From assembly GCA_047495785.1 (NCBI GenBank), contig JBLDXI010000032.1:2790001-2854000 (forward strand): a DNA stretch of 64,000 nucleotides. The letters are read 5' to 3'. The translations under genes were made by a program, and so were the position numbers. Every line of letters starts with the position of its first letter. Position 1 is the stretch's first letter. Of the stretch, positions 8,552 to 39,916 are shown piece by piece. The notes under the pieces are model-generated. The model did not search any database. It was not told where the DNA came from and saw only the letters and a program-made list of their open reading frames with translations. The DNA comes from Lepidodermella squamata. Taxonomy: Eukaryota > Animalia > Gastrotricha.

Positions 8552-9718
8552 ATGCATTGCCTTCGTTCTTTTCTCGTAATCTTGCAGCTGATGGCTATCA
8601 AATGCGATGAGGTTCAATATCCGTCATCCATGATATCTAGCCCTACAGAATTTTACGACCCGAACGAAATTCTAGCTATTTGCCCTAACTTTGCAGGTTG
8701 GCGATACAGCCCACACTCCTCTTCAGGTCCTAAAATAGAGATCGGAGCCCGTTATGAGCCGTTCAGCTTCAACGGCATCGACAGCTCAAATGAAGTTGCC
8801 TCAATTACTGGATTACTTGAGTTTCAATGGACGGCAATGTGTTTAGGCTGGCAGGCTTGTCTAAACAGAACGATCTCAGAGGTGATATGCAAACCGCCCG
8901 ACCTGATGTGGCGACCGCATTTCATGTTTCGCGGAAACTCCAGGATGTCATTGGTTACTGAAAGTCACGAAGAAACCCTTCGTGTGTTATTCAAGCCTCA
9001 TGTTGGAGACATGGCCGAGTTGTTCGGGTTTCGATGGTCCATAAGAGGCGAATTCACTTCATACTGCAAATTAAATCTGAGACGATTTCCATTGGACCAA
9101 CAAATCTGCGACTTCGTATTCCAATTAGCCGAGTCGAACTTTGATTTCAGGCTCACCGATGTAACTTTTGTGGCTATTTCGGCCATGCTAGAATCATGGA
9201 ATGCTGAGTGGAAAATTATTTCGTACAATACGAGCATAGTTAAACGATATTATGCTATTTTTTCTCCTGCTGTTGTAATCCGAATTTCTGCTTCTAGAAA
9301 TCCAGATTTCTATCTCTACCATCTATTAGCGCCTTGTTTTATTTTGGCTATCATGGAGATGTGCAGTTTCGCTCTGCCACCGGATACTTCTGAAAGGGCT
9401 GCGTTCACTCTAACGATCTACCTGTCATTCGCAGTTCTTGAATCGCAACTGATCAGCATGATCCCTAAAACACCGCAAAAAATGCTGATTGCTGATTTCA
9501 TCCTATTTCAGGCAGTCTTCTCGCTTCTTAGCACGATATACTCCGCTGTCATATGCTTGATCACTAACACAATGCCTGAAATGGCGACGAAGCAAATCAA
9601 AATCGTCGGGAAGTTCAACATGAAAGTTCAGTCTTTAGCCGACTTGCTGTTTTTCTTTGTTTTCGGATTCACTCTCGTATCAGCTACTATTTATTTCATG
9701 CTGGAAATGTCTGTGTGA
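8552..9718 (+). CDS. Divergent Cys-loop ligand-gated ion channel subunit (nAChR-like), intronless; LGIC-1
   Basis: Signal peptide, WRP loop A, Cys-loop CKLNLRRFPLDQQIC, pre-M1 R, four TM helices, M2 ERAAFTLTIYLSF. Confidence 0.9.
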   Translation: MHCLRSFLVILQLMAIKCDEVQYPSSMISSPTEFYDPNEILAICPNFAGWRYSPHSSSGPKIEIGARYEPFSFNGIDSSNEVASITGLLEFQWTAMCLGWQACLNRTISEVICKPPDLMWRPHFMFRGNSRMSLVTESHEETLRVLFKPHVGDMAELFGFRWSIRGEFTSYCKLNLRRFPLDQQICDFVFQLAESNFDFRLTDVTFVAISAMLESWNAEWKIISYNTSIVKRYYAIFSPAVVIRISASRNPDFYLYHLLAPCFILAIMEMCSFALPPDTSERAAFTLTIYLSFAVLESQLISMIPKTPQKMLIADFILFQAVFSLLSTIYSAVICLITNTMPEMATKQIKIVGKFNMKVQSLADLLFFFVFGFTLVSATIYFMLEMSV

Positions 9719-10121
9719 GATACTCGTTTTTCATTTCGCTGAACATTCAGGAAAATAAAGAAAAATTGCTGTCCCTCTTTATCATGCATAGCGACGCAGG
9801 GATATTTCTAACTCCAGAACCTATCGTTACAGTGGAATCGGCTCATTCCATCGAAAGAACAATTCCTGAACAACTTCGAGCTTCCAGCTGAGAAAATGTT
9901 ATTCTGAAGGTGGTTTTATTATTACGATTATGTCCGAAAATGCAATCCCTGCGTCACCGTGTCTCATCCCTGCAATGATTTTGAATCTTCGCAGTTTCTA
10001 CCATACTCCAAGTTCCGAGTAAACAAATAGCAGGAAATTAACTTTGAATGCGCTTGCAATAAAAATGTTAAGCTTCATAATATTTGGGAAAACCATCTTC
10101 AGCAGCTTTGTTATCTTCGTC

Positions 10122-11330
10122 ATGCTTAACAAATCAATTTTCAACGCCTTCGTTTCCTTAGCGTGTTGCTTTTTTCTGACCTTTGCGGAGAATGAGACTA
10201 ATTTCGACGAGTCTTCAAGTAGGACTGAGTCGCCTCCAGAGGATCGATTCCCTGACGACATGATGTACGATCCGCAAGCTTTCTATAATCCTTACGAAGT
10301 TCTCGAATTATGTCCGAATTTTTCGCCCTATCGCTACAGCCCGTATACAAGCCGCGGCCCACCCATATCTATAACAGTTCGATATGAACCGTATAGTTTT
10401 AACGGAATCGACAGCGCTGCTGAGGTGGCATCAATCACGGGCCTCCTCCAATTTCAATGGTCCCCGGTCTGTTTGGGCTGGCGAAGTATGCATAACAGAA
10501 CATTCTCAACCATTCATGTAAACCCCCCGGACATCATGTGGATGCCGAAAATCATTTTCCGTGGAAACTCAGAATTGTCCATTCAATCCAGTGGTAACAA
10601 TCAAGAGCTATTGCTGCACTTTTTTCCCCACCGAAAACCGGACGAAAGTTTCTTTTTTAGCTGGTCGGTTACAGGCGAATTCGTTTCTTATTGTGGCTTA
10701 GATTTGCGGAAGTTTCCTGCCGATACGCAGCAATGCTCTTTCAATTTCCAGCTGGGCGCGTTGCCTTTGGATTTCAAATTCTCTGCTATTCATTTGTATG
10801 GCCAAATAATTTACTCCAGGAATGCTGAATGGAAGGTTCTTTACTACAATGCAAGTATAATAAAAGGCTACTACGCAGGGTTTCCAGCAGTGTCGATTAA
10901 GGTGATTATCAAAAGAGTTCCCGATTTCTACCTTTACCATCTTGTTGCTCCATGTTTTGTGCTTGCGATTATGGAAATGTGCAGCTTTGCCTTGCCTCCT
11001 GAAACATCAGAACGGGCTTCATACACCCTGACTATCTACCTGGCATTTGCTGTACTTGAATCACAGCTGATCACGATGATCCCTAAAACGCCTCAGAAAA
11101 TGCTGATAGCTGATTTGATTTTATTCCAAGCCATTTTTTCGATGATGTGCACAATTTACTCAGCGCTATTGTGCCTTTTCGTCAATGTCAGACCCGAAAT
11201 GGCTGCGAAAAACATTGCACGCAACATCCGACTAAGTTGTCACGCTTTTCTTGACATTTCTTTCTTCATCATTTTCGCATTAGCTTTAATCGCTGCTACT
11301 GCTTACTTTATATTAGCTATTTTGGATTAG
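10122..11330 (+). CDS. Divergent Cys-loop LGIC subunit, intronless; LGIC-2
   Basis: Cys-loop CGLDLRKFPADTQQC, M2 ERASYTLTIYLAF, 4 TM. The ORF-track start is a TTG, so ATG 10122 ahead of the signal peptide was used. Confidence 0.9.
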   Translation: MLNKSIFNAFVSLACCFFLTFAENETNFDESSSRTESPPEDRFPDDMMYDPQAFYNPYEVLELCPNFSPYRYSPYTSRGPPISITVRYEPYSFNGIDSAAEVASITGLLQFQWSPVCLGWRSMHNRTFSTIHVNPPDIMWMPKIIFRGNSELSIQSSGNNQELLLHFFPHRKPDESFFFSWSVTGEFVSYCGLDLRKFPADTQQCSFNFQLGALPLDFKFSAIHLYGQIIYSRNAEWKVLYYNASIIKGYYAGFPAVSIKVIIKRVPDFYLYHLVAPCFVLAIMEMCSFALPPETSERASYTLTIYLAFAVLESQLITMIPKTPQKMLIADLILFQAIFSMMCTIYSALLCLFVNVRPEMAAKNIARNIRLSCHAFLDISFFIIFALALIAATAYFILAILD

Positions 11331-11613: not shown

Positions 11614-12837
11614 ATGATTTTGCTGGATAACAAAATTTATTGCATCCAAGGTTTGCTTTTACAAGCTATCGTCATGCTGGCAGGTGCGCAGTACGATGAG
11701 TCTTTGGCGGAGGATGAAGCTCCTTCTGAGGAGGAAAGATTCCCGCAGTCAATGACAGATGACCCAGGGGGCGTCTTTGACACTTCCGAAATCTTGACTT
11801 ATTGCCCCAACTTCTCACCAATGCGATACAGCCCTCTCAATACGAAGATCTCTCCTCGACTAGAGATTGCCGTTAGTTACGAGCCTTATAGTTTCAATGG
11901 AATCGATAGCACTGCAGAGGTCGCGTCAATAACTGGCTCACTCGAATTCCAATGGATGCCGCTATGCAGGAACTGGCAGCATTTTCGGAATCGGTCACAT
12001 TATTCGAAAATAGAATGCGAACCACCGAGCGTGATGTGGCGGCCGAAAATCATATTCCGGGGAAATAACAAGGCTTCCCTCAAATCGGACGACCGTGACG
12101 AGAGACTGTCTATCTCTGTTATGTCAGGCAAACCAGCAAACGAAATGTTTGACTTCCGATGGTCTTTGAGGGGCGAATTTTTTTCGTATTGCAAATTGAA
12201 TTTGCGCAAATTCCCCGCCGATACTCAGCGGTGTTATTTCATTTTTCAGCTGGGCGATAGTGGTCTCGACTTCAAGCTCAAAGAGTTTCTCCTACCTTTT
12301 GCTGCTCCACCAGAATCGTGGAACGCTGAATGGAATGTTATCTCTTATAATGCAAGTATCGTAAAAAACTATTACATTGGTACTCCGGCTGCAATTATAA
12401 CGATAACGGCAGTGAGGAAGCCTGAATTCTATCTCTACCATCTTGTTGCTCCATGTTTTGTGCTTGCGATTATGGAAATGTGCAGCTTTCTCCTGCCATC
12501 CGAAACTTCAGAAAGGGCTTCATACACCCTGACCATCTACCTAGCTTTCGCGGTTCTCGAATCGCAACTAATCACGATGATCCCAAAAACGCCACAGAAA
12601 ATGCTGATAGCTGACTTGATTCTTTTCCAAGCCGTTTTTTCGATGATGTGCACAATTTACTCGGCTTTCCTCTGCCTTTTCGTCAACACAAAACCGAATT
12701 TGGCTCAGAGAAAAATCACTTTATTCAGAAAGGTGAAGTTTTGTTTCCAGTCACTGCTGGATTTCTGTTTCTTTGTCATCTTTGCATCCGCTTTGATTAT
12801 TGCTACGATTTATTTCGTGTTATCTATTATGGAGTAG
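11614..12837 (+). CDS. Divergent Cys-loop LGIC subunit, intronless; LGIC-3
   Basis: Cys-loop CKLNLRKFPADTQRC; TM domain nearly identical to LGIC-2. Confidence 0.9.
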   Translation: MILLDNKIYCIQGLLLQAIVMLAGAQYDESLAEDEAPSEEERFPQSMTDDPGGVFDTSEILTYCPNFSPMRYSPLNTKISPRLEIAVSYEPYSFNGIDSTAEVASITGSLEFQWMPLCRNWQHFRNRSHYSKIECEPPSVMWRPKIIFRGNNKASLKSDDRDERLSISVMSGKPANEMFDFRWSLRGEFFSYCKLNLRKFPADTQRCYFIFQLGDSGLDFKLKEFLLPFAAPPESWNAEWNVISYNASIVKNYYIGTPAAIITITAVRKPEFYLYHLVAPCFVLAIMEMCSFLLPSETSERASYTLTIYLAFAVLESQLITMIPKTPQKMLIADLILFQAVFSMMCTIYSAFLCLFVNTKPNLAQRKITLFRKVKFCFQSLLDFCFFVIFASALIIATIYFVLSIME

Positions 12838-13014: not shown

Positions 13015-14145
13015 ATGCTTGGTTTCATCCTTATTTTAGGGTTAATAACTGCTGGCGTCAGTGCAACCGAGCAGATCGTGTTGCAGCCTCGAACAACCCC
13101 GTTCTTTGAAATATCGGAACTGCTAACTTATTGTCCTAATTTGTCACCAAGCAGAATGCAGCCTCAAGATGCGCCTGTGCTAATGGACTTGAGAATAGAA
13201 CTCTACAGCTTCAATAGCCTTGACAGCACAGCCGAAATCATATCAGTAACCGGAATTGTTCAGTTTGTCTGGATAGTTAAATGCTCGCAATGGCAGCTGC
13301 TGAGCAACCTAACAACTGTAAGCTTGTTTTACATTGAACCGCCATCAGCGGTTTGGCGCCCGAAGGTTTTGCTATTGAATGGCCAACAAGTGGTGCTAAC
13401 AAACGGCTACTATGCCGAACAGGTCAGGGTCAGCCATGTTCCTACGTACAGGACGGAACTCATCTTCACGTGGGACATTCGCGGTCGATTCGATTACAAA
13501 TGTCCGTTGAATTTATACAAATTTCCCGGAGATTCGCAGCAATGCGAAGCCGTATTTCAAACGGGAGAGACTGCTATGACCAATAAATTTAAATCCTTCA
13601 ACACTTACTTGACGCCTTTCTTTACGAGTGATAAAGCTGAGTGGAATTTCATCTCGACAAATGCGACCATTCGACTTGGGCCCGGGTTAATGCCGCAAGC
13701 TATTTACACGATTGTAATATCTCGAAAATCTGGCTTCTACGTCACTCATCTCCTCACGCCGTGTTTCATCTTAGCGATCATGGAAATGTGCAGTTTCGGT
13801 CTACCGCCCGACACGGCTGAAAGAACGACTTATACTATGACGATATATCTGGCCTTTGCTGTTCTCGAATCTCAGTTGGTCAGTATGATCCCCCGAACTT
13901 CGGAACGAATGCTACTAGTCGACTACATCGTATTTCAAGCGGTCTTTTCAATGGTTTGCACCATTTACAGCACGGCGATGTGCATGTTCATCAACTACTG
14001 GCCAGACATGGCTGATCGCGAGGTTGAACTGGCGAAATGTTTCAAAGTCAGGCTCAGATCCATTATCGACTTGTTTGCTGTCGTAATTTTCTTCGTCTTC
14101 CTAGCCGGCACTACTGCCTATTATTTGCAAGAAATTCTGGCCTAG
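13015..14145 (+). CDS. Divergent Cys-loop LGIC subunit, intronless; LGIC-4
   Basis: Cys-loop CPLNLYKFPGDSQQC, M2 ERTTYTMTIYLAF. ATG 13015 matches the start of paralog 27042. Confidence 0.9.
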   Translation: MLGFILILGLITAGVSATEQIVLQPRTTPFFEISELLTYCPNLSPSRMQPQDAPVLMDLRIELYSFNSLDSTAEIISVTGIVQFVWIVKCSQWQLLSNLTTVSLFYIEPPSAVWRPKVLLLNGQQVVLTNGYYAEQVRVSHVPTYRTELIFTWDIRGRFDYKCPLNLYKFPGDSQQCEAVFQTGETAMTNKFKSFNTYLTPFFTSDKAEWNFISTNATIRLGPGLMPQAIYTIVISRKSGFYVTHLLTPCFILAIMEMCSFGLPPDTAERTTYTMTIYLAFAVLESQLVSMIPRTSERMLLVDYIVFQAVFSMVCTIYSTAMCMFINYWPDMADREVELAKCFKVRLRSIIDLFAVVIFFVFLAGTTAYYLQEILA

Positions 14146-14281: not shown

Positions 14282-15490
14282 ATGAAATTCGCTTTTCTGA
14301 TTCTCGTATTATCGGTTGTCTGTTATGAAAGTTATTGCTCTGCTGTTTCTGACTTGAATAAACGACCATCAGAGGCTGCTTCTGTTTTCTTGCTTCCCCA
14401 AGGCAACATATATACCAGCGCGCAGCTTTTGGAAAAATGCCCAAATTTTCACCCGGAAAGAATTAGCCCGTTGAAGAGAAGCACAATCGACCTGAACGCC
14501 CAGCTCAAAGTTGTGAATCTGACCACAATCGACGGTTCTCGCGAAGAGGTGCATATTACAGCGAGATGGATCTTGAATTGGTCTTGCGATTGCGTGGATA
14601 AAACTGCATTCTCGGAGGAAAATGAAACCAGTGAAATCATGACAAGCGCCTCAGAAATTTGGACACCCACCATACTGTTCACCAACAGCAAATCGATTTT
14701 ACTAACCGAATCAGGCTATCCGAGTGTGACTTTCGTTCGGTATCAGCCAGGCAAGAAGATCCAAAACTTGCCGCTGTTCGAATTTCAAACAGTCATCTTC
14801 GGAAATTTCAAATACGCATGCCATTTAGACCTGAGGGCGTTCCCAGCTGACGTTCAAAGTTGCGCGGCCTACTTTCAAGCATATCAATTTCGTGCGGCTT
14901 ACTATTTTCAATCGTGCGCCGTGTCAGACGCTAACAACATCATCAATGCTCAGTCGGATAATTCAGAATGGATTGTCCGCAATATCACCTGTTCGATTTT
15001 CTCGCAGGACACGTTTTCTGTCGTCTCTTACCGAATTGTAGCGGCGAGGAAGCCTGATTTTTTCCTCATCCACATGTTGATACCATGTTTCATCTTGGTC
15101 GTCATGGAGCTGTGTACCTTCGCGCTTACAGCAAGTGAAGTAGAGCGCACGACGTTCACAATGACAATTTATCTCGCTTTTACCTTAATCGAACAACAAC
15201 TGATTGATTTAATGCCTAAAACGCCGCAAAGAATTGTTTTAGCAGAGTATCTACTATTCCAATCTTGCTTTTCGATGTTCATGACGTTGTACGCTGCTTT
15301 GACGTGTTACTTCTGTGAGCATTATCCTAAAGCGGCCGGTAGAAAGGCGCTGCGAGTTTGCGGCCTTGTCAAATTGCGCGTAATTCAAATTGTTGACCTT
15401 GTTGCTTTTCTGGTTTGCTTGCTCACCTTAGCAGGCGCTTCTACCTATTTCATTTACACAATTTTCACAATTGACGTCGAAGACGAATGA
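14282..15490 (+). CDS. Divergent Cys-loop LGIC subunit, intronless; LGIC-5
   Basis: Signal peptide, PQGNI..CPNF N-terminus, Cys-loop CHLDLRAFPADVQSC, 4 TM. Confidence 0.9.
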   Translation: MKFAFLILVLSVVCYESYCSAVSDLNKRPSEAASVFLLPQGNIYTSAQLLEKCPNFHPERISPLKRSTIDLNAQLKVVNLTTIDGSREEVHITARWILNWSCDCVDKTAFSEENETSEIMTSASEIWTPTILFTNSKSILLTESGYPSVTFVRYQPGKKIQNLPLFEFQTVIFGNFKYACHLDLRAFPADVQSCAAYFQAYQFRAAYYFQSCAVSDANNIINAQSDNSEWIVRNITCSIFSQDTFSVVSYRIVAARKPDFFLIHMLIPCFILVVMELCTFALTASEVERTTFTMTIYLAFTLIEQQLIDLMPKTPQRIVLAEYLLFQSCFSMFMTLYAALTCYFCEHYPKAAGRKALRVCGLVKLRVIQIVDLVAFLVCLLTLAGASTYFIYTIFTIDVEDE

Positions 15491-15989
15491 TTCTTAACTT
15501 TTCTCTGAATTCTAAATTCGCTGGAATTTATTCTACGCTTCACCCCGGTATACCCCGAGAAGGAAACTCTTGTATAGTAAATTTTGATAATAAAAACTTT
15601 AGAATTAAGGCAGATTTTTTTATTTCAAAATGCTCGTTTTTTTGCTCGAGTCGGTAACATTGCAGTTTGGAGAATAGGATAACCAATCGGAAACTTCTGT
15701 GTGACTCATGATAAGAATTCTTTATCGGTTTGATCATTGCAGAGGGGAAAAACATTTGACCTTTTCCCATTCCCAAGTTTATCTGGCGGCGATAGTATTT
15801 TTTGCAATGCCGGATCCAGCCCCCGAGCCTATACATGCCGCGCCTTATTCTGCGATCATGCCGTCTCCCGTCTGCCACCTGGGGCCCAGGTTTTGGACCC
15901 AACCCAGCTGATTCAGTAAGCGTCCAAAAGGGTCATTTTTATTTTCAAACATTTCTCGAATAATCGGATTTTTAATTGGCTAATACGAA

Positions 15990-17267
15990 ATGTATCAGCC
16001 TCTTCTCCTTATGCTACTCTTGTCTTTATCAGTCGCCTGCCAGAACAACCAAACTAACGGGCCGTTTGGAGAGGACGATAGCGAAAGTGAAGAGTTCACC
16101 GATGTGATCGAACGGCCTAAAAAAATGTCAGCTGCCACCTTCGTCCTCCCCCAGGGCAACATTCATCGCAGTTCGGATGTTCTAGAAAAATGCCCAAATT
16201 TCCACCCGGAACGAATTAGCCCTTACAAAAATGTGACAGTGCAGATTCAAAGCTATTTCGACCTCTACAACCTGACAAGTATCGATGAGAGCCGGGAAGA
16301 AATAGTCATATCTGGCGGTCTTCGTTTTCGATGGACGATTGATTGCGAAGACCCGAATGCTTTCAACGAGGAGACAGAAAACAGTCGACTCAATGTCAAT
16401 CCTGACGACATGTGGAAACCCCTCATTTTATTCACAAACAGCAAAACTGCAATTCTATCGCAATCCGGTATATCTCAGACGCTGCAGGTTACGTATTCAC
16501 CGGGGCTGAAAGTTCAACATGCCCCGGCGTGGCTTTTTCAATGGGACATTATTGGCACGTTCAAATATTCCTGTGATCTTGACCTTCGTGGATTCCCGGC
16601 TGACGTTCAAAGTTGCGAGGCTGTTTTCCAAACTGCTGAGGGTATGAATGCTTATAACATTACCGGGATGAAATCCGGCGATAACCAAGACCTGAGGGAG
16701 ATCGTCTCCGAAAATTCTGAATGGGACATTCTTGGATTCTCGTATTCTGTTCGCAGGGGCTACGCGACGTCCTCTGTTGCTTCTTTCAAACTTGTCATCG
16801 CTCGAAGGCCTGATTTTTTCATGTTCCACATGGTTGCCCCGTGCTTCATCTTAGTTATCCTTGAACTGTGCAGTTTCGCCCTGCCGCCGAAAGGAGGAGA
16901 CCGGACCGCGTATACAATGGCAATCTATCTAGCTTTCACCTTCATCGAATCACAGCTGTTAGACGTCATGCCTCGAACCCCCCAGCGCATTGTTCTAGCT
17001 GAATACATCATGTTCCAAGCGTGTTATTCAATGAGCATAACACTCTATTCGGCAATTGTTTGCTATGTGCATGAAAACTATCCGTGGTTTTCGGAGAGAA
17101 AGTTTCGAAAAAAGCGTAGGTGGCTGCTGCAGCAGTTTATAGATTTGATAGCTTTCATCTGCTTTCTCATCGTATTGATCACCGCTTCTGTTTACTTTGT
17201 GACCACGATTCTAACAATAGACGACAACGATGATTACGATATTCCGTTCAAGGGTACTAAACATTGA
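15990..17267 (+). CDS. Divergent Cys-loop LGIC subunit, intronless; LGIC-6a
   Basis: Cys-loop CDLDLRGFPADVQSC, M2 DRTAYTMAIYLAF. Confidence 0.9.
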   Translation: MYQPLLLMLLLSLSVACQNNQTNGPFGEDDSESEEFTDVIERPKKMSAATFVLPQGNIHRSSDVLEKCPNFHPERISPYKNVTVQIQSYFDLYNLTSIDESREEIVISGGLRFRWTIDCEDPNAFNEETENSRLNVNPDDMWKPLILFTNSKTAILSQSGISQTLQVTYSPGLKVQHAPAWLFQWDIIGTFKYSCDLDLRGFPADVQSCEAVFQTAEGMNAYNITGMKSGDNQDLREIVSENSEWDILGFSYSVRRGYATSSVASFKLVIARRPDFFMFHMVAPCFILVILELCSFALPPKGGDRTAYTMAIYLAFTFIESQLLDVMPRTPQRIVLAEYIMFQACYSMSITLYSAIVCYVHENYPWFSERKFRKKRRWLLQQFIDLIAFICFLIVLITASVYFVTTILTIDDNDDYDIPFKGTKH

Positions 17268-17318
17268 AAAAAGTAATAAAAATTCTGTGCGAGAGGTTTC
17301 ACCTTGTTATTAAAAAAA

Positions 17319-18539
17319 ATGGAAAAATTCCATATTTTATCAGTGATTTTTCAAGTTGTTTTCGCGTATTCTTGCGGCAATGAAACTACGACCTCAGAAT
17401 TTGTTGTTCCCACAAGGAAGAAATCAAGCCCTGCATCATTCATCGCACCGCAAGGCAACATTGATTCCCCGATGGAAGTTCTGGGGAAATGTCCTAATTT
17501 CAGCCCTAATCGAATCACTCCATCTAAGTCGGACACTTTCGATATCCTCAGCTTCTTCGAAATAAATAGCATCACGAGTGTGGATAATGCGATGGAAGAA
17601 ATCTCTATGACTGGATTGATGCGATTTTCCTGGTTTTTAGAATGCTCCGATAAGACGGCCTTTCCTAACGAAACTGAAATCAGTCGGTTCCAGGCTGATC
17701 CTAATTCGTTCTGGAAGCCGTCGATAATTTTTCTGAACAGCAGATACCTATCGCTTGAGACAATGTCAAGCCAGTTAACCGTTACGTTCTCGCCGTCTCG
17801 GCGCGGCTATGGCGATCCTCCGTTCTTTTTCAGCTGGCGACTTGTGGGCAATTTTCCGTATTTTTGCAAGCTGAACCTCGAGTACTTCCCAAGCGACGTC
17901 CAGCGATGTGAAGCGGTTTTTCAAACCGAAGAACCTTCAAGTTTGTACAACTTCTCGCGTGTTGCTTATGGGAAGGCTGAATTGATCGCACAAGGCAATT
18001 CAGAGTGGCGGTACATCGGCTGTGAAGTTCAAGTTCGAAAAGGCTTCGCATTGACCTCGGTAACAAGCTTCGCCATCTCACTAGCGCGAAGGCCCGAGTT
18101 CTATTTCACGCACATGGTTGTGCCTTGCATAGTCCTAGTCGTGTTGGAAATGTGCTGCTTCGCCTTGCCGTGGGAAACGGCAGAACGGGCCCAGTTTACC
18201 ATGTCGATCTATTTGGCATTCACGTTCATCGAGGCGCAGCTGCTAAATTCTATCCCACAAACATCGCAGCGAATTTTACTGGCTGATTTTCTAGTTTACC
18301 AATCGTTCTTTTCAACGCTAATCACTATTTACGCTTCGGTTTGTTGCCTGATTTGGCGCTTGTTTCCAGCTATATCGAATAGGCTGTATTTCGGTGTTCG
18401 ATTGAGAATCATCGTCGATGCAATCGCCTTCACTTTATGCTTGATCATTGCTGCTTCTGTTATTACGAGTTTCATAACGACTGTTTTCAGTAATCGAAGT
18501 GAACCGAAATTGGTATGTAGCGATACTTCTGCTATATGA
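17319..18539 (+). CDS. Divergent Cys-loop LGIC subunit, intronless; LGIC-7a
   Basis: Cys-loop CKLNLEYFPSDVQRC, M2 ERAQFTMSIYLAF. First ATG is at 17319 (the track start is TTG). Confidence 0.9.
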   Translation: MEKFHILSVIFQVVFAYSCGNETTTSEFVVPTRKKSSPASFIAPQGNIDSPMEVLGKCPNFSPNRITPSKSDTFDILSFFEINSITSVDNAMEEISMTGLMRFSWFLECSDKTAFPNETEISRFQADPNSFWKPSIIFLNSRYLSLETMSSQLTVTFSPSRRGYGDPPFFFSWRLVGNFPYFCKLNLEYFPSDVQRCEAVFQTEEPSSLYNFSRVAYGKAELIAQGNSEWRYIGCEVQVRKGFALTSVTSFAISLARRPEFYFTHMVVPCIVLVVLEMCCFALPWETAERAQFTMSIYLAFTFIEAQLLNSIPQTSQRILLADFLVYQSFFSTLITIYASVCCLIWRLFPAISNRLYFGVRLRIIVDAIAFTLCLIIAASVITSFITTVFSNRSEPKLVCSDTSAI

Positions 18540-19314
18540 ATACACCCTTATTCGAAGACCATTCGAAAAAGCTTTGCTCCGTCGGACCTAAATGGCCTGT
18601 ATTAGGATAAACTTTGTCCAATAAATTATTTTACTTAATTTCACAGAAGTCAAAATCTGTGGACTCTTGATTCCCTCGCGGTTGTCTATTTTTTACTTGA
18701 TTCAATTACCAGACCGAATATCATGAAAAATCGTTCGAATAGCTGATCCGTAGAGAAAGGAATGAGCTTTCGAAAGACGCAGCAAAAGCATGTTTGGCGA
18801 GAATCTTGCACGAAAAAATAAAAAAAATCAGATTTTCTTCAGCAACTTTTTAAGGTCGCTTGTGATTTCAAATAATTCGGTCATCCGATACGACAGATAC
18901 GGTCGTATCGGATACGGTCATCCGATTTGACCCAGAAAGTGATACAGGAATCCTTGTGTTTCGGGTCGAAACTCTCCGGAATCACTGTTTTAAAAATAAC
19001 TTTAATAAAAGCCGAAATCGATAAAGTTGATCGATGAAAAAAGGCCGGCTATTTTTGAATTCGGAAAAATAGATGTTGTAGCAAGTAATGCCAAATGGAT
19101 ATTCCCGCCGGAAAGGTTGTAGGATGTTAGGAACGGCGACGAGGTAGCTTTTCCGGTCAAAATACCCCAAACCCGCGGTAAAAGCAGGCAGAATCGAAAT
19201 CAAGAGGACAAGCCGATTTTATTTTCCAGTTTATTTTCCTTTTTCTTATTCTATAAAAAAGTACCTATTCAACAATATCTTTGTGCTAATCAGTGCTGAG
19301 ATAATGAGTCATTG

Positions 19315-20173
19315 CTAATTAGAAATCATGCCATTAAGCAAGGAAAATGCTACGACAGCGCCAGCCAGAAGGAAGAAGGTGGCAGAGAAACGGTAACCAG
19401 CACAGCAACCTGGAAATAATAAAATATCATCGATTAAAATCACGGCAATTGAGCCAAATTACGCGTGCAGTTGCAATCGTCGTAGTTACAACAGGCGTCA
19501 ATGTCCTTATCGCTTGAGTTGTTGTGTTTTTCACCTGATGAACTGGCACAGTCCGCGTGGCTTGCACAGGATTGAACAGCCACGTCCGTCTCTTGAGTCC
19601 ATTCGAGCTTGAAAAATTCAAAATTCTCAGTCAAACTTGGAAAGGTCGTGGATAAAAGCTATCTCTGGTCTTTTAGAGGCTACCTTCAACCAGGATAAAC
19701 AGTTATAAATAGCATTTCTAGTTATCTTGCGCAATTAAACTCTCTGAATGGTGCGGCGACAAAACAGCAACTGTGCAGAACAGCGAATGCGACGAAACAG
19801 CAAATTTGTTATTTCGCGAAATAACAGCGAAAACTTACTGCGTAAAAGATGCATTGTGTTTCTGCTGTTATGTCGCAAATTAAAAAATTTGCTATTATGT
19901 CGCGTTTGCTGTTTTGTGTATTTGCTGTTACGACGGTCTGCGATAATATTCAGAGGGCAAATAACCAAAGCCCTGTAGTTAATTTTGAGCAATCAAATTT
20001 AATTGAGATACCTTGCACATGGTCTTATCGGATGGGCAGCTAATACCCTCAATCTTTTCTATAGCTTGACATTCTTCCAGAGTTCCCGTGCAGACATGGC
20101 ACGATATCGCCGAGGTAGCGTCGAATAAAAATACGAAAATAAGGAACACGTAAGAGATCAGTTTGTCGCACAT
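19315..20173 (-). CDS. Ly6/uPAR (three-finger) protein, probably GPI-anchored, 3 exons; Ly6-1a
   Basis: Exons 20173-20012, 19607-19463, 19409-19315. Signal peptide, then ISCHVC..C..CPSDKTMCK|LEW..SC..C..CCNYDDCNC, then a hydrophobic tail (FSATFFLLAGAVVAFSLL). CCxxDxCN is the LU-domain terminal motif. Confidence 0.85.
19740..19957. mobile_element. Fold-back/MITE-like element in intron 1 of Ly6-1a (duplicated at 24528-24745)
   Basis: Ends ctctctgaat / attcagaggg are inverted. The left arm has gcgaNNNaacagc subrepeats and the right arm their reverse complements (tttgctgttNtgtcgc-like). Confidence 0.6.
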
Positions 20174-20777
20174 TGGTATATAGGTTCGAGAATATTTAAT
20201 TGATTGAGTGTATTGTGACAGATAATGAAAAAGTGAACAAAAACTAGAGCTCATTTATCGTTTAGCGCTTTATCGTTGAGACGGCCTTTCTGAACACGTG
20301 CTTTCCTACGATCTTCCGCGCCAAAAATATCACACATGACGCGTTCGAAAATAGATGGCATTCCTTGGGAAATGCTTTGAATTTTGTGACATGTGGTCGC
20401 GTGCCTTCATCTGGGTATCACTATATTTATACAACTGTAACTGCCTCTACAAAAAAAGCTTCAGTACGAACAAAAATTAAAACTGGCTTGAATTTTCCTA
20501 GATAATCGCCGTTGAAGCTGGTTGCAATCGGGTTTGAAAGGTAGGCAAGATGGAAACATATAAAAATACCGATTCTATTGCCAGAATTTGTTTGTCAATT
20601 TCAAGGTTCAAGCCTGTCTACTTTGCTGTAGACTTAGTGGAACTAGCGAATTTTCCCAATTGGTCGAAAAATTTGAAACATAATTGATTGCTCAAAAAAG
20701 ATCCAGGGAAGCATTCATTTCATTTTTTTCCACGATTAACGATTACATTTTCAATCTTTTTAATTGGCTAATACGAA

Positions 20778-27041: not shown

Positions 27042-28172
27042 ATGTTTGGTTTCATCCTAATTTCAGGGTTACTATCTGGAGGTAGTGCAGCTGAACCCAC
27101 CGTGTTAAAGCCACGAACCACCCCGTTCTATGAAATATCGGACCTGCTAACTTATTGTCCTAATTTATCCCCGACCAGGATGCAGCCTCAAGATGCGCCT
27201 GTCCTAATGGACTTGCGAATAGAACTCTACAGCTTCGATGGCCTGGATAGCACTGCAGAAATCATCTCTGTCACCGGCATATTACAATTTGTCTGGAAAG
27301 TGAAATGCTCGAATTGGGAACTGCTGAGCAACCTAACGACCGGAAGCTTGTTTTACATTGAACCGCCATCGGCAGTTTGGCGCCCAAAAGTGTTGCTATT
27401 AAATGGCCAACAAGTAGTGCTAACAAACGGCTACTACGCCGAACAGGTCAGGGTCACCCACGTTCATACTTATGGCACTGAGCTCCTCTTCACGTGGGAT
27501 ATTCGCGGTAGATTCGATTACAAATGTCCGTTGAATTTATACAAATTTCCCGGTGATTCGCAGAAATGCAAAGCCATATTCCAAACGGGGGAAAATGCGA
27601 TGGTTAATAAATTTATATCCTTCACCACTTACTTGACGCCTTACTTTACGAGCGATAAAGCTGAGTGGAATTTCATCTCGACAAATGCGACAATTCGGCC
27701 TGGTCCCGCGTTGATGCCGCAAGCTATTTACACGATTGTAATATCTCGAAAATCTGGCTTCTACGTCACTCATCTCCTCACGCCGTGTTTCATCTTGGCG
27801 ATCATGGAAATGTGCAGCTTCGGTCTACCGCCCGACACGGCTGAAAGAACGACTTATACTATGACAATATATCTCGCCTTTGCTGTTCTCGAATCTCAGT
27901 TGGTCAGTATGATCCCACGAACTTCGGAACGAATGCTACTCGTCGACTACATCGTATTTCAAGCGGTCTTTTCAATGGTTTGCACTATTTACAGCACGAC
28001 TATGTGCATGTTCATCAACTACTGGCCAGACATGGCTGATCGCGAGGTTGACCTGGCGAAATATTACAAATTTAGACTCAGATCTATCATCGACTTGGTT
28101 GCCGTCGTCATTTTCTTCGTGGTCCTGGCCGGCACCACCGCCTCTTACTTACAAGACATTTTGGTCCAGTGA
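27042..28172 (+). CDS. Divergent Cys-loop LGIC subunit, intronless; LGIC-8 (close paralog of LGIC-4)
   Basis: Cys-loop CPLNLYKFPGDSQKC; collinear with and highly similar to 13015-14145. Confidence 0.9.
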   Translation: MFGFILISGLLSGGSAAEPTVLKPRTTPFYEISDLLTYCPNLSPTRMQPQDAPVLMDLRIELYSFDGLDSTAEIISVTGILQFVWKVKCSNWELLSNLTTGSLFYIEPPSAVWRPKVLLLNGQQVVLTNGYYAEQVRVTHVHTYGTELLFTWDIRGRFDYKCPLNLYKFPGDSQKCKAIFQTGENAMVNKFISFTTYLTPYFTSDKAEWNFISTNATIRPGPALMPQAIYTIVISRKSGFYVTHLLTPCFILAIMEMCSFGLPPDTAERTTYTMTIYLAFAVLESQLVSMIPRTSERMLLVDYIVFQAVFSMVCTIYSTTMCMFINYWPDMADREVDLAKYYKFRLRSIIDLVAVVIFFVVLAGTTASYLQDILVQ

Positions 28173-28678: not shown

Positions 28679-29884
28679 ATGCGCGTTTTTACCCTAACGG
28701 TTTTGGCTTCAGTCCTTAGTGCGAACTTTTCATACGCTGATTCGATTGTCACCTCTGGAAATGATACAGAAATTCGAGCGGTCGACAGACCTACCCCGGC
28801 CAAACCGCCCAGTCCTGCATCTTTTTTTCTGCCCCAAGGTAATATTCACTCTCATCGCCAGTTATTGGACCAGTGCCCAAACTTCAGTCCTGAAAGAATC
28901 AGTCTGTCAAACTCGGATACAATTCAAATCGAAGCTTTCTTTGAAATGTCGAACCTCACCGGAATCGAAGACGCCATGGAAGAAATATCAATGACGGGGA
29001 AGATTAGTTTTTCTTGGAAAGCCGATTGCTCCAATGCCACGGCCTTTTCAGACGAAACCCAAGGAAGTAAATTTCGCACAGACCCAGCTAATTTATGGCG
29101 ACCGACTGTGACATTCCTAAACAGCAGATCAATGACATTTCACGAGATGGCGGAAAGTTTACTCGTTACTTTCATTATCAACAAAAAGAAGGATAGGTTC
29201 GTTTTTCAATGGCAGTTGTTGGGAAATTTGAGGTTCTTCTGCAAACTCAAACTTGAAATTTTCCCAAGCGATGTCCAGCAATGCGAGGCGATTTTTCAAA
29301 CTGATGAACCTGCTGCTATCTACAACTTTTCCTCCGTCCACTACGGTGATACTAGGCTGATCGAAGCTGGCGATACAGAGTGGCGATTCATCAAAGCTAC
29401 AGCAACCCGCCGTAATGGCTACGCCACTACGTCAATCGCAAGTTTCACAGTTGTTTTGGCGCGACGGCCGCAATTCTACGTTGCTCACATGATTGTCCCT
29501 TGTATTGTCTTAGTCGTCTTGGAAATGTGTTGCTTCGCCCTGCCGTGGAAAACAGCTGAACGAGCGCTGTTTACCATGTCGATTTACCTGGCGTTCACCT
29601 TTGTGGAGTCGCAACTCCTTAATATTATCCCACGCACGTCACAACGCGTTTTGCTGGCAGACTACCTCATGTACCAGTCTGTGTTTTCGATGATTATCAC
29701 TATTTATTCAGCATTAGGATGCCTGGTTTGGCGGTTGGTTCGGTATAAATCGCGAAAAAGAATAATATGGAATTTGCATATTCGACATGTCGTTGATTTA
29801 ATTGCTTTTCTGTTATCCTTGGTAGCAGCAATTTCTGCTAATATCTACTTTCTTATGGCAATATTCTCAGTTCAAGAAAGTTAA
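28679..29884 (+). CDS. Divergent Cys-loop LGIC subunit, intronless; LGIC-9 (related to LGIC-7)
   Basis: Cys-loop CKLKLEIFPSDVQQC, M1-M2 CFALPWKTAERALFTMSIYLAF. Confidence 0.9.
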   Translation: MRVFTLTVLASVLSANFSYADSIVTSGNDTEIRAVDRPTPAKPPSPASFFLPQGNIHSHRQLLDQCPNFSPERISLSNSDTIQIEAFFEMSNLTGIEDAMEEISMTGKISFSWKADCSNATAFSDETQGSKFRTDPANLWRPTVTFLNSRSMTFHEMAESLLVTFIINKKKDRFVFQWQLLGNLRFFCKLKLEIFPSDVQQCEAIFQTDEPAAIYNFSSVHYGDTRLIEAGDTEWRFIKATATRRNGYATTSIASFTVVLARRPQFYVAHMIVPCIVLVVLEMCCFALPWKTAERALFTMSIYLAFTFVESQLLNIIPRTSQRVLLADYLMYQSVFSMIITIYSALGCLVWRLVRYKSRKRIIWNLHIRHVVDLIAFLLSLVAAISANIYFLMAIFSVQES

Positions 29885-38492: not shown

Positions 38493-38665
38493 TCCGAAAA
38501 GGAAAGAACCATATATTATTATTTTTGTGGTATTTCTTAATTCTTAATATTTTATTTGATTAAAGTAAATAAACTGTTCGTGAGGTTACGTCGTGTTTTT
38601 TTCTGCGGCTGTTTAAACATAACAGCCATAATTCTCTAAATTTTTCAGCCTAAAATTATTCGAGA

Positions 38666-39916
38666 ATGATACAATTTGGCAAGTCATGTTCAATAATTAC
38701 GTATTTTTTGCTGCTAATAATTGTCTTAGTAAAAAATGAAGAACTGATCGAAGAAGAATCGACTACTTTAGAGCCAACAACCCGTAAACGGGGATCCTTT
38801 GCCACTTTCTTTATTCCACAAGGAAATATTCGGTCAAATGCTGAATTACTGGTAAAATGTCCAAATTTCGGCCCAGAAGTTACGACTCCCTCGAAAACGG
38901 ATACGATGAACATTGACGCGAGCTTTCTACTACAAAATCTAACCCATGTCGACAGTCAGCACGAGCAAATTTCAGTCATGGCCACGCTGTTCTTCAACTG
39001 GCTTGCAGATTGCTCAGATGAAAATGCTTTCAAATCAGAGACCGAGAGGAGCAAGCTAAACGTCGCTTCCTCAGCTATCTGGACACCGTCGATTTTCTTC
39101 GAAAACAGCCATTCAAAATATTTGCTCGATCCGACCATTGCTCAGCGAGTTCAAGTAGTTTACAGCCCAGGAAAGCGAATTCTCGGCGTTCCGTTGTTTC
39201 AATTTACCTGGGCTCTATTCGGTGAATGGACTTTTTTCTGCCGAATGAACTTGACCTACTTCCCGGGCGATGTTCAGCGATGCGAGGCCATTTTCCGCAC
39301 AGATGAACCAACCCCTGTCGTCAACATCTCGAGCGCTACTTATCTGGATCCTAATCTATTAATCGGAGGAAATTCAGAATGGGAATTCTATGATTATGAA
39401 GTATTTATTAGGAGAGGATACGCTGCAACCCTGGAATCAGGTTTCGCTATAACCATAGCAAGAAGGCCGGAATTTTTCATGTACCACATGGTTGCTCCTT
39501 GCTTTGTTCTATTTGTCTTGGAAATGTGTAGCTTCGCGCTACCAGCCGAGACGGGTGAAAGATCGTCCTATACAGTGGCTATCTACCTGGCTTACACTTT
39601 CATCGAAAGTGAACTGGTTTCAGTCATTCCGAAGACTGCACAACGGATCGTTCTTGCGGAATACCTGATATTCCACGCTGGTTTCAGCATGTCGATAACA
39701 ATATACTCATCGCTGATTTGTTACCTATGGAATCACTACCCGTCTTTGGCTAAGAAATATCGCGTGAAATTGGCAAATTTCCGGTTTGGAACGAGGCAGC
39801 TTGTTGATATATTGGCATTTTTTATTTCTTTGATTATTTTAATCTTCTCGACGTACCACTACATGTCGAGTATTATTGATCATATCAACGATAGGAAAGC
39901 ATTAAAGAGATTCTAA
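38666..39916 (+). CDS. Divergent Cys-loop LGIC subunit, intronless; LGIC-10
   Basis: PQGNI..CPNF, Cys-loop CRMNLTYFPGDVQRC, M1-M2 SFALPAETGERSSYTVAIYLAY. Confidence 0.9.
   Translation: MIQFGKSCSIITYFLLLIIVLVKNEELIEEESTTLEPTTRKRGSFATFFIPQGNIRSNAELLVKCPNFGPEVTTPSKTDTMNIDASFLLQNLTHVDSQHEQISVMATLFFNWLADCSDENAFKSETERSKLNVASSAIWTPSIFFENSHSKYLLDPTIAQRVQVVYSPGKRILGVPLFQFTWALFGEWTFFCRMNLTYFPGDVQRCEAIFRTDEPTPVVNISSATYLDPNLLIGGNSEWEFYDYEVFIRRGYAATLESGFAITIARRPEFFMYHMVAPCFVLFVLEMCSFALPAETGERSSYTVAIYLAYTFIESELVSVIPKTAQRIVLAEYLIFHAGFSMSITIYSSLICYLWNHYPSLAKKYRVKLANFRFGTRQLVDILAFFISLIILIFSTYHYMSSIIDHINDRKALKRF

What the first reader, a model, noticed from the sequence alone, without database searches (positions are those of the whole stretch)
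8552..39916. Intronless tandem array of 12 orphan Cys-loop receptors that have lost the acetylcholine-binding site: candidate independent 'chemotactile-like' ionotropic chemoreceptors
Seen: 12 co-oriented single-exon genes (10 distinct) in a region where most other genes have introns. All keep the Cys-loop, WxP, pre-M1 Arg, an acidic -1' residue before M2 (ER/DR) and Leu9'. All lack the loop C vicinal CC/YxCC and the loop B Trp (FQL/FQT/FRT instead of FGSW), and the M3-M4 loop is very short. The extracellular domains are highly diverged while the TM domains are conserved. Known: cephalopod chemotactile receptors are intronless, tandemly clustered nAChR derivatives that lost ACh binding, and an acidic -1' residue marks cation selectivity. 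Inference: this is a lineage-specific receptor repertoire for environmental ligands that may co-assemble combinatorially and arose convergently.
Basis: partly seen in the sequence, partly recalled or inferred. Interest (0 to 1): 0.9.

Follow-up and report, generated by a model that had tools for sequence, protein, structure and literature searches.

The report
Array of intronless orphan Cys-loop channels
Twelve intact, intronless genes in a row encode an unusual stripped-down relative of nicotinic receptors, with no acetylcholine site, no cytoplasmic domain and an extra disulfide; they are real and under selection, but a sensory role is unproven.

Summary
Twelve co-oriented single-ORF genes (10 distinct) encode pentameric ligand-gated channel subunits of 376-425 aa. 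All keep the Cys-loop, WxP, the pre-M1 Arg, E/D-R before M2 and Leu9'. All lack the loop B Trp and the loop C CC. The M3-M4 linker is only about 12-16 residues.

They are functional genes. There are no fragments. Variants in gene 15990 are 33 synonymous to 1 non-synonymous, dN/dS is about 0.12, and one putative RNA run covers gene 15990.

New here: they belong to a well-supported clade (100/100) separate from canonical nAChR-like proteins. An extra Cys pair (C68/C119) and the missing intracellular domain mark this clade. All sampled relatives are unnamed metagenome ORFs that also sit in intronless clusters. Solved nAChRs are the nearest known proteins, at 21% identity or less.

The array is old: synonymous sites are saturated, and there are two subfamilies. 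One 4.8-kb unit is a 100% identical tandem copy.

The chemosensory, "chemotactile-like" reading is untested. No positive selection is seen in the ligand-binding domain. Intronless tandem arrays of divergent nAChR-like genes are already known in molluscs.

The scan's own unchecked notes report similar arrays on other pieces of this genome. The organism was not identified.

The parts
8552..9718 (+). pLGIC gene 1 (388 aa), subfamily B
   Evidence: Single ORF; Pfam LBD 1.4e-13 and memb 2.7e-06; tree.
10065..11330 (+). pLGIC gene 2 (421 aa from the first ATG), subfamily B
11614..12837 (+). pLGIC gene 3 (407 aa), subfamily B
13015..14145 (+). pLGIC gene 4 (376 aa), subfamily B; 89% identical to gene 10
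   Evidence: dN/dS against 27042 is 0.12.
14282..15490 (+). pLGIC gene 5 (402 aa), subfamily A
15990..17267 (+). pLGIC gene 6 (425 aa), subfamily A; the modelled reference copy
   Evidence: Pfam. AF2 model pLDDT 87.7. 33 synonymous and 1 non-synonymous variants. Contigs of the putative RNA run X2 cover 16318-17291. AATAAA lies 8 nt after the stop.
17319..18539 (+). pLGIC gene 7 (406 aa), subfamily A; its ATG is 51 nt after the stop of gene 6
20778..22055 (+). pLGIC gene 8, identical copy of gene 6
22107..23327 (+). pLGIC gene 9, identical copy of gene 7
27042..28172 (+). pLGIC gene 10 (376 aa), subfamily B
28679..29884 (+). pLGIC gene 11 (401 aa), subfamily A
38666..39916 (+). pLGIC gene 12 (416 aa), subfamily A; lies beyond the TRPM gene
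15969..25542 (.). Two 100% identical tandem units of 4786 bp (15969-20754 and 20757-25542). Each holds two pLGIC genes, one antisense Ly6-like gene and a MITE-like palindrome.
   Evidence: Exact identity at offset 4788. Read-derived unitigs of run X1 stop exactly at 15998 and 20754, as expected at repeat borders for k=31. The window's own sequence has depth of about 80-138, against about 51-63 for the alternative allele.

Best explanation
The 12 genes (10 distinct) encode subunits of a distinct, nAChR-derived clade of pentameric Cys-loop channels.

Each subunit has these parts:
- a signal peptide;
- an N-terminal helix ending in a conserved C-P-N-F/L motif. Its Cys most likely bonds a second family-specific Cys just after strand beta2 (inferred from strict co-conservation);
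- a beta-sandwich ligand-binding domain with a canonical Cys-loop;
- four membrane helices.

The M2 helix carries the E/D(-1')-R(0') ring and Leu9' typical of cation-selective channels with a hydrophobic gate. M3 and M4 are joined by about 12-16 residues, so there is no intracellular domain: no MA helix, no lateral portals, and no sites for cytoplasmic scaffolds or chaperones.

The subunit-interface pocket has lost the loop B Trp and the loop C disulfide that bind acetylcholine. The agonist is therefore most likely something else and remains unknown.

The genes are maintained by purifying selection, and at least one is transcribed. The array grew by old tandem duplications into two subfamilies, plus one very recent 4.8-kb duplication.

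Shown: gene integrity, fold, motifs, clade, selection, and transcription of one gene.
Inferred: pentamer formation, cation selectivity, the extra disulfide, and a non-cholinergic ligand.

The confidence given is for this molecular description. A role as peripheral chemoreceptors is one possibility, about 0.25, and is not shown.
For: - Twelve intact loci and no fragments.
- Pfam LBD and TM domains.
- Invariant Cys-loop, WxP, R272, E/D-R and L314.
- AF2 model with pLDDT 87.7 and pTM 0.80. It has the full pLGIC fold, M3 ending at residue 363 and M4 starting at 380.
- Foldseek finds only pLGICs, at 12-21% identity.
- In the family-profile search of PDB, the top 60 are all nAChR subunits, with alpha7 at 1e-41.
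- Trees: the short clade is separated from canonical nAChR-like proteins with support 100/100 and 96.
- Clade signature: C68 in 79/79 and C119 in 78/79 of the short clade, against 1/23 and 0/23 of the canonical clade. Median M3-M4 span is 27-28 residues against 79. No loop C CC in 0/79. Loop B Trp in 6/79 against 19/23.
- Purifying selection: 33 synonymous to 1 non-synonymous variants and dN/dS 0.12.
- Transcription: contigs of the putative RNA run X2 cover 16318-17291 at depth 16-47, with zero depth over the next 1.8 kb. They end 24 nt past the stop, just after AATAAA.
- Short peptides can replace the 5-HT3A M3-M4 loop experimentally, which was studied in PMC3335078. Loss of the domain is therefore compatible with function.
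Against: - No functional data of any kind.
- Pentamer formation, ion selectivity and the disulfide are inferred from motifs only. Model coordinates could not be inspected.
- Non-alpha nAChR subunits also lack the CC and the loop B Trp. Loss of these residues does not by itself prove that ACh plays no part if the subunits pair with an alpha subunit encoded elsewhere.
- Expression evidence rests on one run whose RNA nature is only guessed by the tool, and it covers one gene clearly.
- No sequence of a cephalopod chemotactile receptor, 5-HT3 receptor or ZAC could be placed in my trees.
Confidence: 0.8

Rival explanations
1. They are ionotropic chemoreceptors for environmental ligands, working like cephalopod chemotactile receptors but of independent origin.
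For: - They share the gross features of chemotactile receptors: intronless, clustered, ACh residues lost, nAChR-derived. Those features are described in PMC11526382 and PMC13174522; here they are shown.
- The family is large and divergent, and its ECD is more variable than M1-M3.
- Relatives carry N-terminal extra domains on Thr-rich stalks, which suggests extracellular recognition.
- The scan's own unchecked notes list more such arrays and lectin- or SRCR-fused versions in this genome.
Against: - No expression site is known.
- The only measurable dN/dS shows equal, strong constraint in ECD and TMD, at 0.12. Diversifying selection is reported for chemotactile receptor pockets (PMC11526382).
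- The array is ancient rather than rapidly turning over, and it has no pseudogenes.
- Expanded intronless nAChR-like genes in bivalves are linked to development, stress and immunity rather than to chemosensation (PMC6896357).
Confidence: 0.25
2. They are receptors for an endogenous, non-cholinergic transmitter or modulator, or for protons or ions, and are used in ordinary neuronal or epithelial signalling.
For: - Strong purifying selection and old, stable paralogues.
- An acidic residue follows the loop B position in most copies.
- H280, E292 and E320 are invariant inside M1 and M2 in all 10 window genes, but are mostly N, Q/E and Q in relatives. These are possible titratable sites.
- Orphan pLGICs of nematodes turned out to be amine-gated (PMC8536830, abstract only).
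Against: No ligand can be inferred from sequence. So many divergent paralogues are more than a single transmitter system usually needs.
Confidence: 0.35
3. They are non-alpha (structural or complementary) subunits. They co-assemble with canonical alpha subunits encoded elsewhere, so the pentamer is still ACh-gated.
For: - The loop D Trp (W115) is invariant in the window genes, and a Tyr or Phe aligned with Y259 in loop C is present in most copies.
- Vertebrate beta subunits also lack the loop B Trp and the CC. The Torpedo beta chain is the best single-sequence PDB hit.
Against: - The clade is separated from canonical nAChR-like proteins with full support.
- None of the 79 members has a loop C CC.
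- The missing intracellular domain and the extra N-terminal disulfide make mixed assembly with standard subunits less likely. This last point is inference.
Confidence: 0.1
4. The lack of an intracellular domain reflects horizontal acquisition of a prokaryote-type pLGIC.
For: Short M3-M4 linkers are typical of prokaryotic homologues (PMC3335078). The genes are intronless.
Against: - The canonical Cys-loop with FPxDxQxC is present.
- The profile search of PDB ranks 60 animal nAChR chains first, with no GLIC or ELIC among them.
- The clade is sister to animal nAChR-like proteins.
- The genes have signal peptides, and several have AATAAA signals.
Confidence: 0.03

Closest known systems
Nicotinic acetylcholine receptor subunits (alpha7, muscle beta/alpha) of animals
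   Same: Best sequence matches among solved structures: alpha7 at 1e-41 with the family profile, and Torpedo beta at 4e-21 with one sequence. They share the fold, the Cys-loop, WxP, pre-M1 Arg, the E-K/R ring and Leu9'.
   Different: - 21% identity or less.
- No loop B Trp and no YxCC.
- No intracellular domain: about 12-16 linker residues, against a median span of 79 in the canonical clade of my tree.
- An extra Cys pair, C68/C119.
- A separate clade, with support 100/100.
Cephalopod chemotactile receptors (CRT1, CRB1)
   Same: Both are intronless, clustered and nAChR-derived, and both have lost ACh-binding residues. Chemotactile receptors form homo- or heteropentameric cation channels gated by hydrophobic molecules (PMC11526382, PMC10338036, PMC13174522).
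   Different: - No chemotactile receptor chain is among the 60 best PDB matches, which are all vertebrate or Torpedo nAChRs.
- The literature places chemotactile receptors inside the molluscan nAChR radiation, whereas this clade lies outside the canonical nAChR-like clade of my tree.
- No evidence here for sensory expression, a hydrophobic pocket or diversifying selection.
- No direct tree with chemotactile receptor sequences could be built.
Expanded intronless, tandemly arrayed nAChR-like genes of molluscs (Jiao et al. 2019, PMC6896357)
   Same: The same genomic pattern: intronless genes in tandem arrays of up to 12, highly diverse ligand-binding domains, and many copies without conserved ACh sites.
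   Different: The molluscan proteins found here (Littorina, Mactra, Tegillarca) fall with or score as canonical-length nAChR-like proteins. The window family has the extra Cys pair and no intracellular domain. Its only close relatives are unnamed metagenome ORFs.
Alpo4, orphan nAChR-like receptor of Alvinella pompejana (PMC10338036)
   Same: An invertebrate Cys-loop receptor without the loop C CC. It remains an orphan after extensive ligand screening.
   Different: Alpo4 keeps key aromatic binding residues and has an intracellular domain of about 100 residues (308-412). The window proteins have neither.
Prokaryotic pLGICs (GLIC, ELIC)
   Same: A minimal architecture with a very short M3-M4 linker.
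   Different: They lack the Cys-loop disulfide and are not among the best matches. The window genes are animal-type.

Membership tests
Pentameric ligand-gated ion channel (Cys-loop) superfamily | Neur_chan_LBD beta-sandwich followed by four TM helices | tested here: met
   Pfam hits for all 10 distinct proteins. AF2 model with strands and M1-M4. Foldseek returns only pLGICs.
Pentameric ligand-gated ion channel (Cys-loop) superfamily | Cys-loop: two Cys 13 residues apart with the FPxD motif | tested here: met
   C195 and C209 are invariant, and F202, P203 and D205 are invariant.
Pentameric ligand-gated ion channel (Cys-loop) superfamily | Assembly into a pentamer with an M2-lined pore | not testable with these tools
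   Only monomer prediction was available.
ACh-gated nicotinic receptors (alpha-type subunits) | Loop B Trp (alpha1 W149) for the cation-pi contact | tested here: not met
   The aligned position is A, G, Y, E or D in the 10 genes, against Trp in 19/23 of the canonical clade.
ACh-gated nicotinic receptors (alpha-type subunits) | Loop C YxCC vicinal disulfide | tested here: not met
   0/10 window genes and 0/69 relatives have it.
ACh-gated nicotinic receptors (alpha-type subunits) | Large M3-M4 intracellular domain with an MA helix | tested here: not met
   23-29 residues between C358 and D385. Helices end at 363 and start at 380.
ACh-gated nicotinic receptors (alpha-type subunits) | Cation-type M2 (acidic -1', basic 0', Leu9') | tested here: met
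   E/D304, R305 and L314 are invariant.
Cephalopod chemotactile receptors | Intronless genes in tandem clusters, with ACh-binding residues lost | tested here: met
   The family features are taken from PMC11526382.
Cephalopod chemotactile receptors | Phylogenetic position inside the cephalopod or molluscan CR and CR-like clades | tested here: inconclusive
   No CR sequence could be put in the tree. Indirectly, no CR chain is among the top 60 PDB matches, and the clade is separate from canonical nAChR-like proteins.
Cephalopod chemotactile receptors | Expression in peripheral sensory cells and gating by poorly soluble environmental molecules | not testable with these tools
   Only one coded, putative RNA run was available.
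Cephalopod chemotactile receptors | Diversifying selection on ligand-pocket residues | tested here: inconclusive
   The only unsaturated pair gives ECD dN/dS 0.125. All other pairs are saturated.
Prokaryote-type pLGICs (GLIC/ELIC) | No Cys-loop disulfide; bacterial or archaeal kinship | tested here: not met
   The Cys-loop is present. The nearest matches are animal nAChRs.
New 'double-Cys, ICD-less' nAChR-like clade (defined here) | Extra Cys pair (after the N-terminal helix and after beta2), an M3-M4 span of about 27 residues, and no loop C CC | tested here: met
   C68 in 79/79 and C119 in 78/79 of the short clade. Clade support is 100/100.

The most novel reading that the evidence does not exclude
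The array is one locus of a large, undescribed receptor family. The family is nAChR-derived and lacks the intracellular domain. It may serve an under-sampled animal lineage as ionotropic sensors of non-cholinergic, possibly environmental, ligands. Some members may be extended by N-terminal recognition domains, and the Ly6/three-finger proteins encoded antisense within the same locus may tune them. This would be a second, independent conversion of nicotinic receptors into sensory receptors, after the cephalopod case.
Probability: 0.2. Interest if true: 0.8.

Novelty: new variant of a known kind. Interest (0 to 1): 0.55.

Why it matters
Only the cephalopod case shows nicotinic-type receptors being re-used for something other than acetylcholine. 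Many expanded invertebrate nAChR-like genes remain orphans.

This clade is a clean natural example of a eukaryotic Cys-loop receptor that has shed the whole intracellular domain and the ACh site, yet is kept under strong selection in many copies. That makes it useful in three ways:
- as a minimal eukaryotic pLGIC for structural and biophysical work;
- as a test of whether the intracellular domain is dispensable in vivo;
- as a candidate set for deorphanisation.

The co-located Ly6-like genes offer a testable receptor-modulator pairing.

Tried and rejected
- **Word-indexed homologue searches.** A single sequence and a 46-sequence profile gave almost nothing: one Littorina nAChR-like protein and two metagenome ORFs. 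The exhaustive profile search was needed.
- **Naming the relatives.** None of the 20 single-domain short-family representatives looked up carries a name or an annotated-genome source. Those traced come from a few ENA metagenome assemblies and one Logan run. The named hits, from bivalves, a hemichordate and a UniRef entry, are long fused gene models that score by summed domains.
- **Identifying the organism.** This failed. The window has no Rfam or tRNA hit. There is no exact-protein record. Run names are coded. Atlas and AlphaFold DB give only generic pLGIC or TRPM neighbours at 21% identity or less.
- **A tree with named 5-HT3, ZAC, chemotactile receptor and Alpo sequences.** This could not be built, because no tool returns those sequences by reference and I did not type sequences.
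- **Pfam on N-terminal extensions of relatives.** No domain was found.
- **Pfam on half of a Ly6-like gene.** This was uninformative.
- **Assembly-artefact reading of the identical duplication.** Rejected as the sole explanation, because read-derived unitigs break exactly at both repeat borders. Copy number per haplotype stays uncertain.
- **Pseudogene or retro-junk reading.** Rejected.

Full report
**1. What is there**

Between 8552 and 39916 the + strand carries 12 long ORFs. Read from their first ATG, they encode proteins of 376-425 aa, each with a hydrophobic N-terminus. A tblastn of the family against the whole 64-kb window finds exactly these 12 loci, all intact and all on the + strand. 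There are no fragments or decayed copies.

All 10 distinct proteins hit Pfam Neur_chan_LBD above the curated cut-off (E 2.6e-9 to 2.1e-14). Nine of the 10 also hit Neur_chan_memb weakly.

Two gene pairs are identical. Positions 15969-20754 and 20757-25542 are a 100% identical tandem repeat of 4786 bp, separated by 2 nt.

Other genes interrupt the array:
- five small antisense two-exon genes with the Ly6/uPAR cysteine pattern;
- a multi-exon TRPM gene at 31070-37706, with a SLOG domain at E 7e-42 and an Ion_trans domain.

Two Na/Ca-exchanger genes with introns lie upstream.

**2.

In the 10-sequence alignment the following are invariant, numbered on gene 15990:
- the Cys-loop C195/C209, 13 residues apart, with F202-P203-x-D205-x-Q207;
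- W142-x-P144;
- the pre-M1 R272;
- R305 (0'), preceded by E in nine copies and D in one (-1');
- L314 (9').

After the Cys-loop the sequence is F-Q/R-T/L/A. The residue aligned with the alpha-subunit loop B Trp is A, G, Y, E or D. The register comes from the HMMER alignment to the Torpedo beta chain and from the 110-sequence alignment. No copy has a vicinal CC in loop C.

Two pocket residues are kept: the loop D Trp (W115) in all 10, and a Tyr or Phe aligned with Y259 in loop C in most copies.

Between C358 in M3 and D385 in M4 there are only 23-29 residues. In the AlphaFold model, M3 ends at residue 363 and M4 begins at 380. The model has mean pLDDT 87.7, pTM 0.80, and most 10-residue blocks of the core above 90. 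There is therefore no intracellular domain.

The ECD is more diverged than the TMD, with mean pairwise identity 0.36 against 0.47. By segment, the Cys-loop, M1 and M2 are at 0.61-0.63, most ECD strands and loops at 0.20-0.40, and M4 at 0.31.

**3. Are they working genes?**

Public read-derived contigs were laid on 15500-21499.

Alternative alleles within gene 15990 were listed at 34 positions. By my translation, 33 are synonymous third-position changes and one is Thr50Ala. This is strong evidence of purifying selection on this reading frame.

The only paralogue pair that is not saturated is 13015/27042, at 89% identity. Its dN/dS is 0.125 in the ECD and 0.119 in the TMD.

A run flagged 'RNA?' (X2) has contigs over 16318-17291 at depth 16-47. 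It has none over the following 1.8 kb, which includes gene 17319. The covered stretch ends 24 nt after the stop codon, just downstream of an AATAAA. That looks like a polyadenylated mRNA of gene 15990 rather than DNA carry-over. Over seven genes, X2 holds 13% of sampled words.

The caveat is that the RNA nature of X2 is the tool's guess, and only one lay of reads was allowed.

**4. The identical duplication**

Unitigs of the DNA run X1 end exactly at 15998 and at 20754. The first is the last 31-mer that still contains unique base 15968. The second is the last base of the repeat. A k=31 graph would do precisely this if the reads contain both contexts of the repeat borders.

Inside the repeat, the window's own sequence has depth of about 80-138 and the alternative allele about 51-63. 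Just upstream, the two alleles are at about 71 and 57.

This fits a real duplication on the assembled haplotype and a single, diverged copy on the other. The depths are noisy, and X1 may be the run the assembly was made from. So there are ten distinct genes, and twelve only on one haplotype.

**5. What they are related to**

Word-indexed searches found almost nothing. The exhaustive profile search of 1.84 billion representatives found 8066 pLGICs, 113 of them at E of 1e-30 or better. Many of the best hits are 370-420 aa long and are covered from the N-terminal motif to M4, so they share the short architecture. The best relatives are only 29-35% identical to any window protein.

I looked up 20 of the single-domain short-family representatives. 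All are unnamed. Nineteen come from ENA metagenome assemblies and one from a Logan run assembly. Those traced further fall in a few ENA samples. There too they are single ORFs, often adjacent: four on L005 and two on L006.

The named high scorers are long gene models from bivalves, a hemichordate and a UniRef entry. They match in several stretches and look like fused tandem genes.

Against solved structures, a single sequence matches the Torpedo beta subunit best (4e-21), then alpha7 and 5-HT3A. With the 46-sequence family profile, the 60 best matches are all nAChR subunits, led by alpha7 at 1e-41. No 5-HT3, ZAC, Gly/GABA, GLIC/ELIC, chemotactile receptor or Alpo chain reaches that list.

Foldseek against PDB and AlphaFold DB clusters confirms the fold. 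It finds nothing above 21% identity.

**6. A distinct clade**

In a 110-row tree, the window proteins and 69 metagenome proteins form one clade (SH-aLRT 96). This clade is apart from 23 canonical-length nAChR-like proteins, which include the Littorina alpha2-like protein.

In a 54-row tree with a careful search, the split between the short family and the canonical group has support 100/100.

The clade has a sequence signature:

| Feature | Short clade | Canonical clade |
|---|---|---|
| Cys after the N-terminal helix (C68, motif C-P-N-F/L) | 79/79 | 1/23 |
| Cys just after beta2 (C119) | 78/79 | 0/23 |
| Median M3-M4 span (residues) | 27-28 | 79 |
| Loop C CC | 0/79 | 2/23 |
| Loop B Trp | 6/79 | 19/23 |

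The strict co-conservation of C68 and C119 suggests a second disulfide, tying the end of the N-terminal helix to the beta2-beta3 loop. This is inferred, because I could not inspect the coordinates.

Within the clade, the window genes fall into two well-supported subfamilies:
- subfamily A: 14282, 15990, 17319, 28679 and 38666;
- subfamily B: 8552, 10065, 11614, 13015 and 27042.

These form an unresolved three-way split with a metagenome group (P0002, P0003, P0005, P0006, P0008). Monophyly of the window genes is only weakly supported: support 56/21 for that branch, and 62% of bootstrap trees. Synonymous sites are saturated for nearly all pairs.

So the array is old, with a few later events: the 13015/27042 copy (dS about 0.3-0.45) and the identical 4.8-kb unit.

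**7. How it most likely works**

From the established roles of these motifs in the superfamily, each protein should be a subunit of a pentameric channel.
- Its pore should be cation-selective, given the acidic -1' ring next to a basic 0' and the absence of the Pro-Ala-Arg anion motif.
- The pore should be closed by a Leu9' hydrophobic gate.
- The Cys-loop and the M2-M3 loop, both among the best-conserved segments, should couple the ECD to the pore as in other family members.

The missing intracellular domain means there are no lateral portals and no binding sites for cytoplasmic scaffolds or RIC-3-type chaperones. Experiments replacing the 5-HT3A M3-M4 loop with short peptides (PMC3335078) make such a minimal eukaryotic channel plausible.

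Loss of the loop B Trp and the loop C disulfide in every member argues against ACh as the agonist of homomers or intra-family heteromers. What the ligand is cannot be read from sequence.

H280, E292 (M1) and E320 (M2 15') are invariant in the 10 window genes. In relatives these positions are mostly N, Q/E and Q. They are candidates for a titratable or ion-binding site, but this is speculation.

**8. Comparison with the known**

Intronless, tandemly arrayed, highly divergent nAChR-like genes are well documented in molluscs. They include 12-gene arrays and many copies without conserved ACh sites (PMC6896357). Cephalopod chemotactile receptors are intronless nAChR derivatives gated by hydrophobic molecules (PMC11526382, PMC10338036). 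A recent preprint describes further molluscan clades with altered binding residues (PMC13174522).

So the kind of thing is known. What is different here:
- the clade is separate from canonical nAChR-like proteins;
- the intracellular domain is completely lost;
- there is an extra conserved Cys pair;
- no named or characterised member turned up in the databases I could search.

The chemosensory interpretation remains a hypothesis. The one selection measurement shows constraint, not diversification, and there are no tissue data.

The scan's own notes, which I did not verify, say the same genome has further arrays of 'minimal' Cys-loop genes, and versions fused to lectin-like or SRCR domains on mucin stalks. 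In line with this, several metagenome relatives have N-terminal extensions of 200-560 aa. In three that I aligned, about 170-180 residues are followed by a Thr/Ser-rich stalk ending at the family's first Cys. None of the ten extended relatives scanned has a Pfam domain in the extension.

**9. Limits**

- The organism was not identified. It is an animal by gene content, with some introns of about 50-70 nt.
- No named outgroups could be placed in the trees.
- There is no pentamer model and no coordinate inspection.
- Expression evidence comes from a single putative RNA run.
- Representatives at 50% identity may hide annotated members, so 'no named relative' means none found, not none existing.

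**Verdict**

This is a new variant of a known kind, and of moderate-to-good interest.

Noticed in passing
window, minus strand, approximate spans: 19470-20173, 24258-24961 (identical copy), 26025-26380, 32509-33113, 33718-34141: Five small two-exon genes antisense to the array. Each has a signal peptide and the Ly6/uPAR (three-finger) cysteine pattern: CxxC...C...C...C in exon 1 and C...C...CCxxxxCN in exon 2. One plausible splice leaves a 51-nt intron. Two of the genes sit inside the large TRPM intron. Ly6 proteins are known nAChR modulators, so this may be a receptor-plus-modulator locus. Pfam on half a domain was uninformative.
   Followed up: partly
window 31070-37706 (+): A multi-exon TRPM-type channel gene (SLOG domain E 7e-42; Ion_trans E 6e-12) lies inside the receptor array, between genes 11 and 12.
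   Followed up: partly
window 17267-17319 and 22055-22107: Gene 7 starts 51 nt after the stop of gene 6. The gene 6 mRNA seems to end at about 17291, after an AATAAA, which leaves about 28 nt for any promoter. Other gaps in the array are 136-506 nt. This suggests operon-like transcription with trans-splicing, or promoters inside upstream genes. In run X2, gene 6 is covered but gene 7 is not.
   Followed up: partly
window 19763-19929 (and its copy 24551-24717): A MITE-like palindrome with 79-nt arms, 76% complementary, 9 nt apart. Its word depth in run X1 is about 5,000-19,000, against about 100 nearby, so it is a very high-copy element. It lies in the intron of a Ly6-like gene.
   Followed up: partly
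window 16853-17048: The same alternative alleles appear in run X1 (2024) and run X2 (2015), at roughly one third to one half of the depth in both. Divergence is about 3% and almost purely synonymous. This could reflect fixed heterozygosity in a clonal or asexual culture, or two old haplotypes.
   Followed up: no
window genes, residues H280, E292 (M1) and E320 (M2 15'); for example 9328-9520 in gene 1: Three ionisable residues inside the membrane helices are invariant in all 10 window genes. In the 69 metagenome relatives they are mostly Asn, Gln/Glu and Gln, and in canonical nAChR-like proteins Asn, Asn and Leu.
   Followed up: partly
relatives P0010, P0018, P0027 (also P0019, P0029, P0048, P0054, P0063, P0085): Metagenome relatives of the family carry N-terminal extensions of 200-560 aa. 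In three aligned cases, about 170-180 residues are followed by a Thr/Ser-rich mucin-like stalk that ends at the family's first conserved Cys. The extensions have no Pfam match.
   Followed up: partly
window 45588-50141 (-): Three tandem pairs of ORFs of about 150-210 aa with several hydrophobic segments. They may be two-exon multi-pass membrane proteins. The pair tested has no Pfam family.
   Followed up: no
window about 2800-8360 (+): Two tandem paralogous Na/Ca-exchanger-type genes (Na_Ca_ex E 6e-21 for the last exon), with introns and a long acidic/Ser-rich cytoplasmic loop.
   Followed up: no
window 50420-63633: Head-to-head pairs of secreted ankyrin-repeat proteins (Ank_2 E 4e-38) with a shared Cys-rich C-terminal region. 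The scan has already noted these as a separate finding.
   Followed up: no
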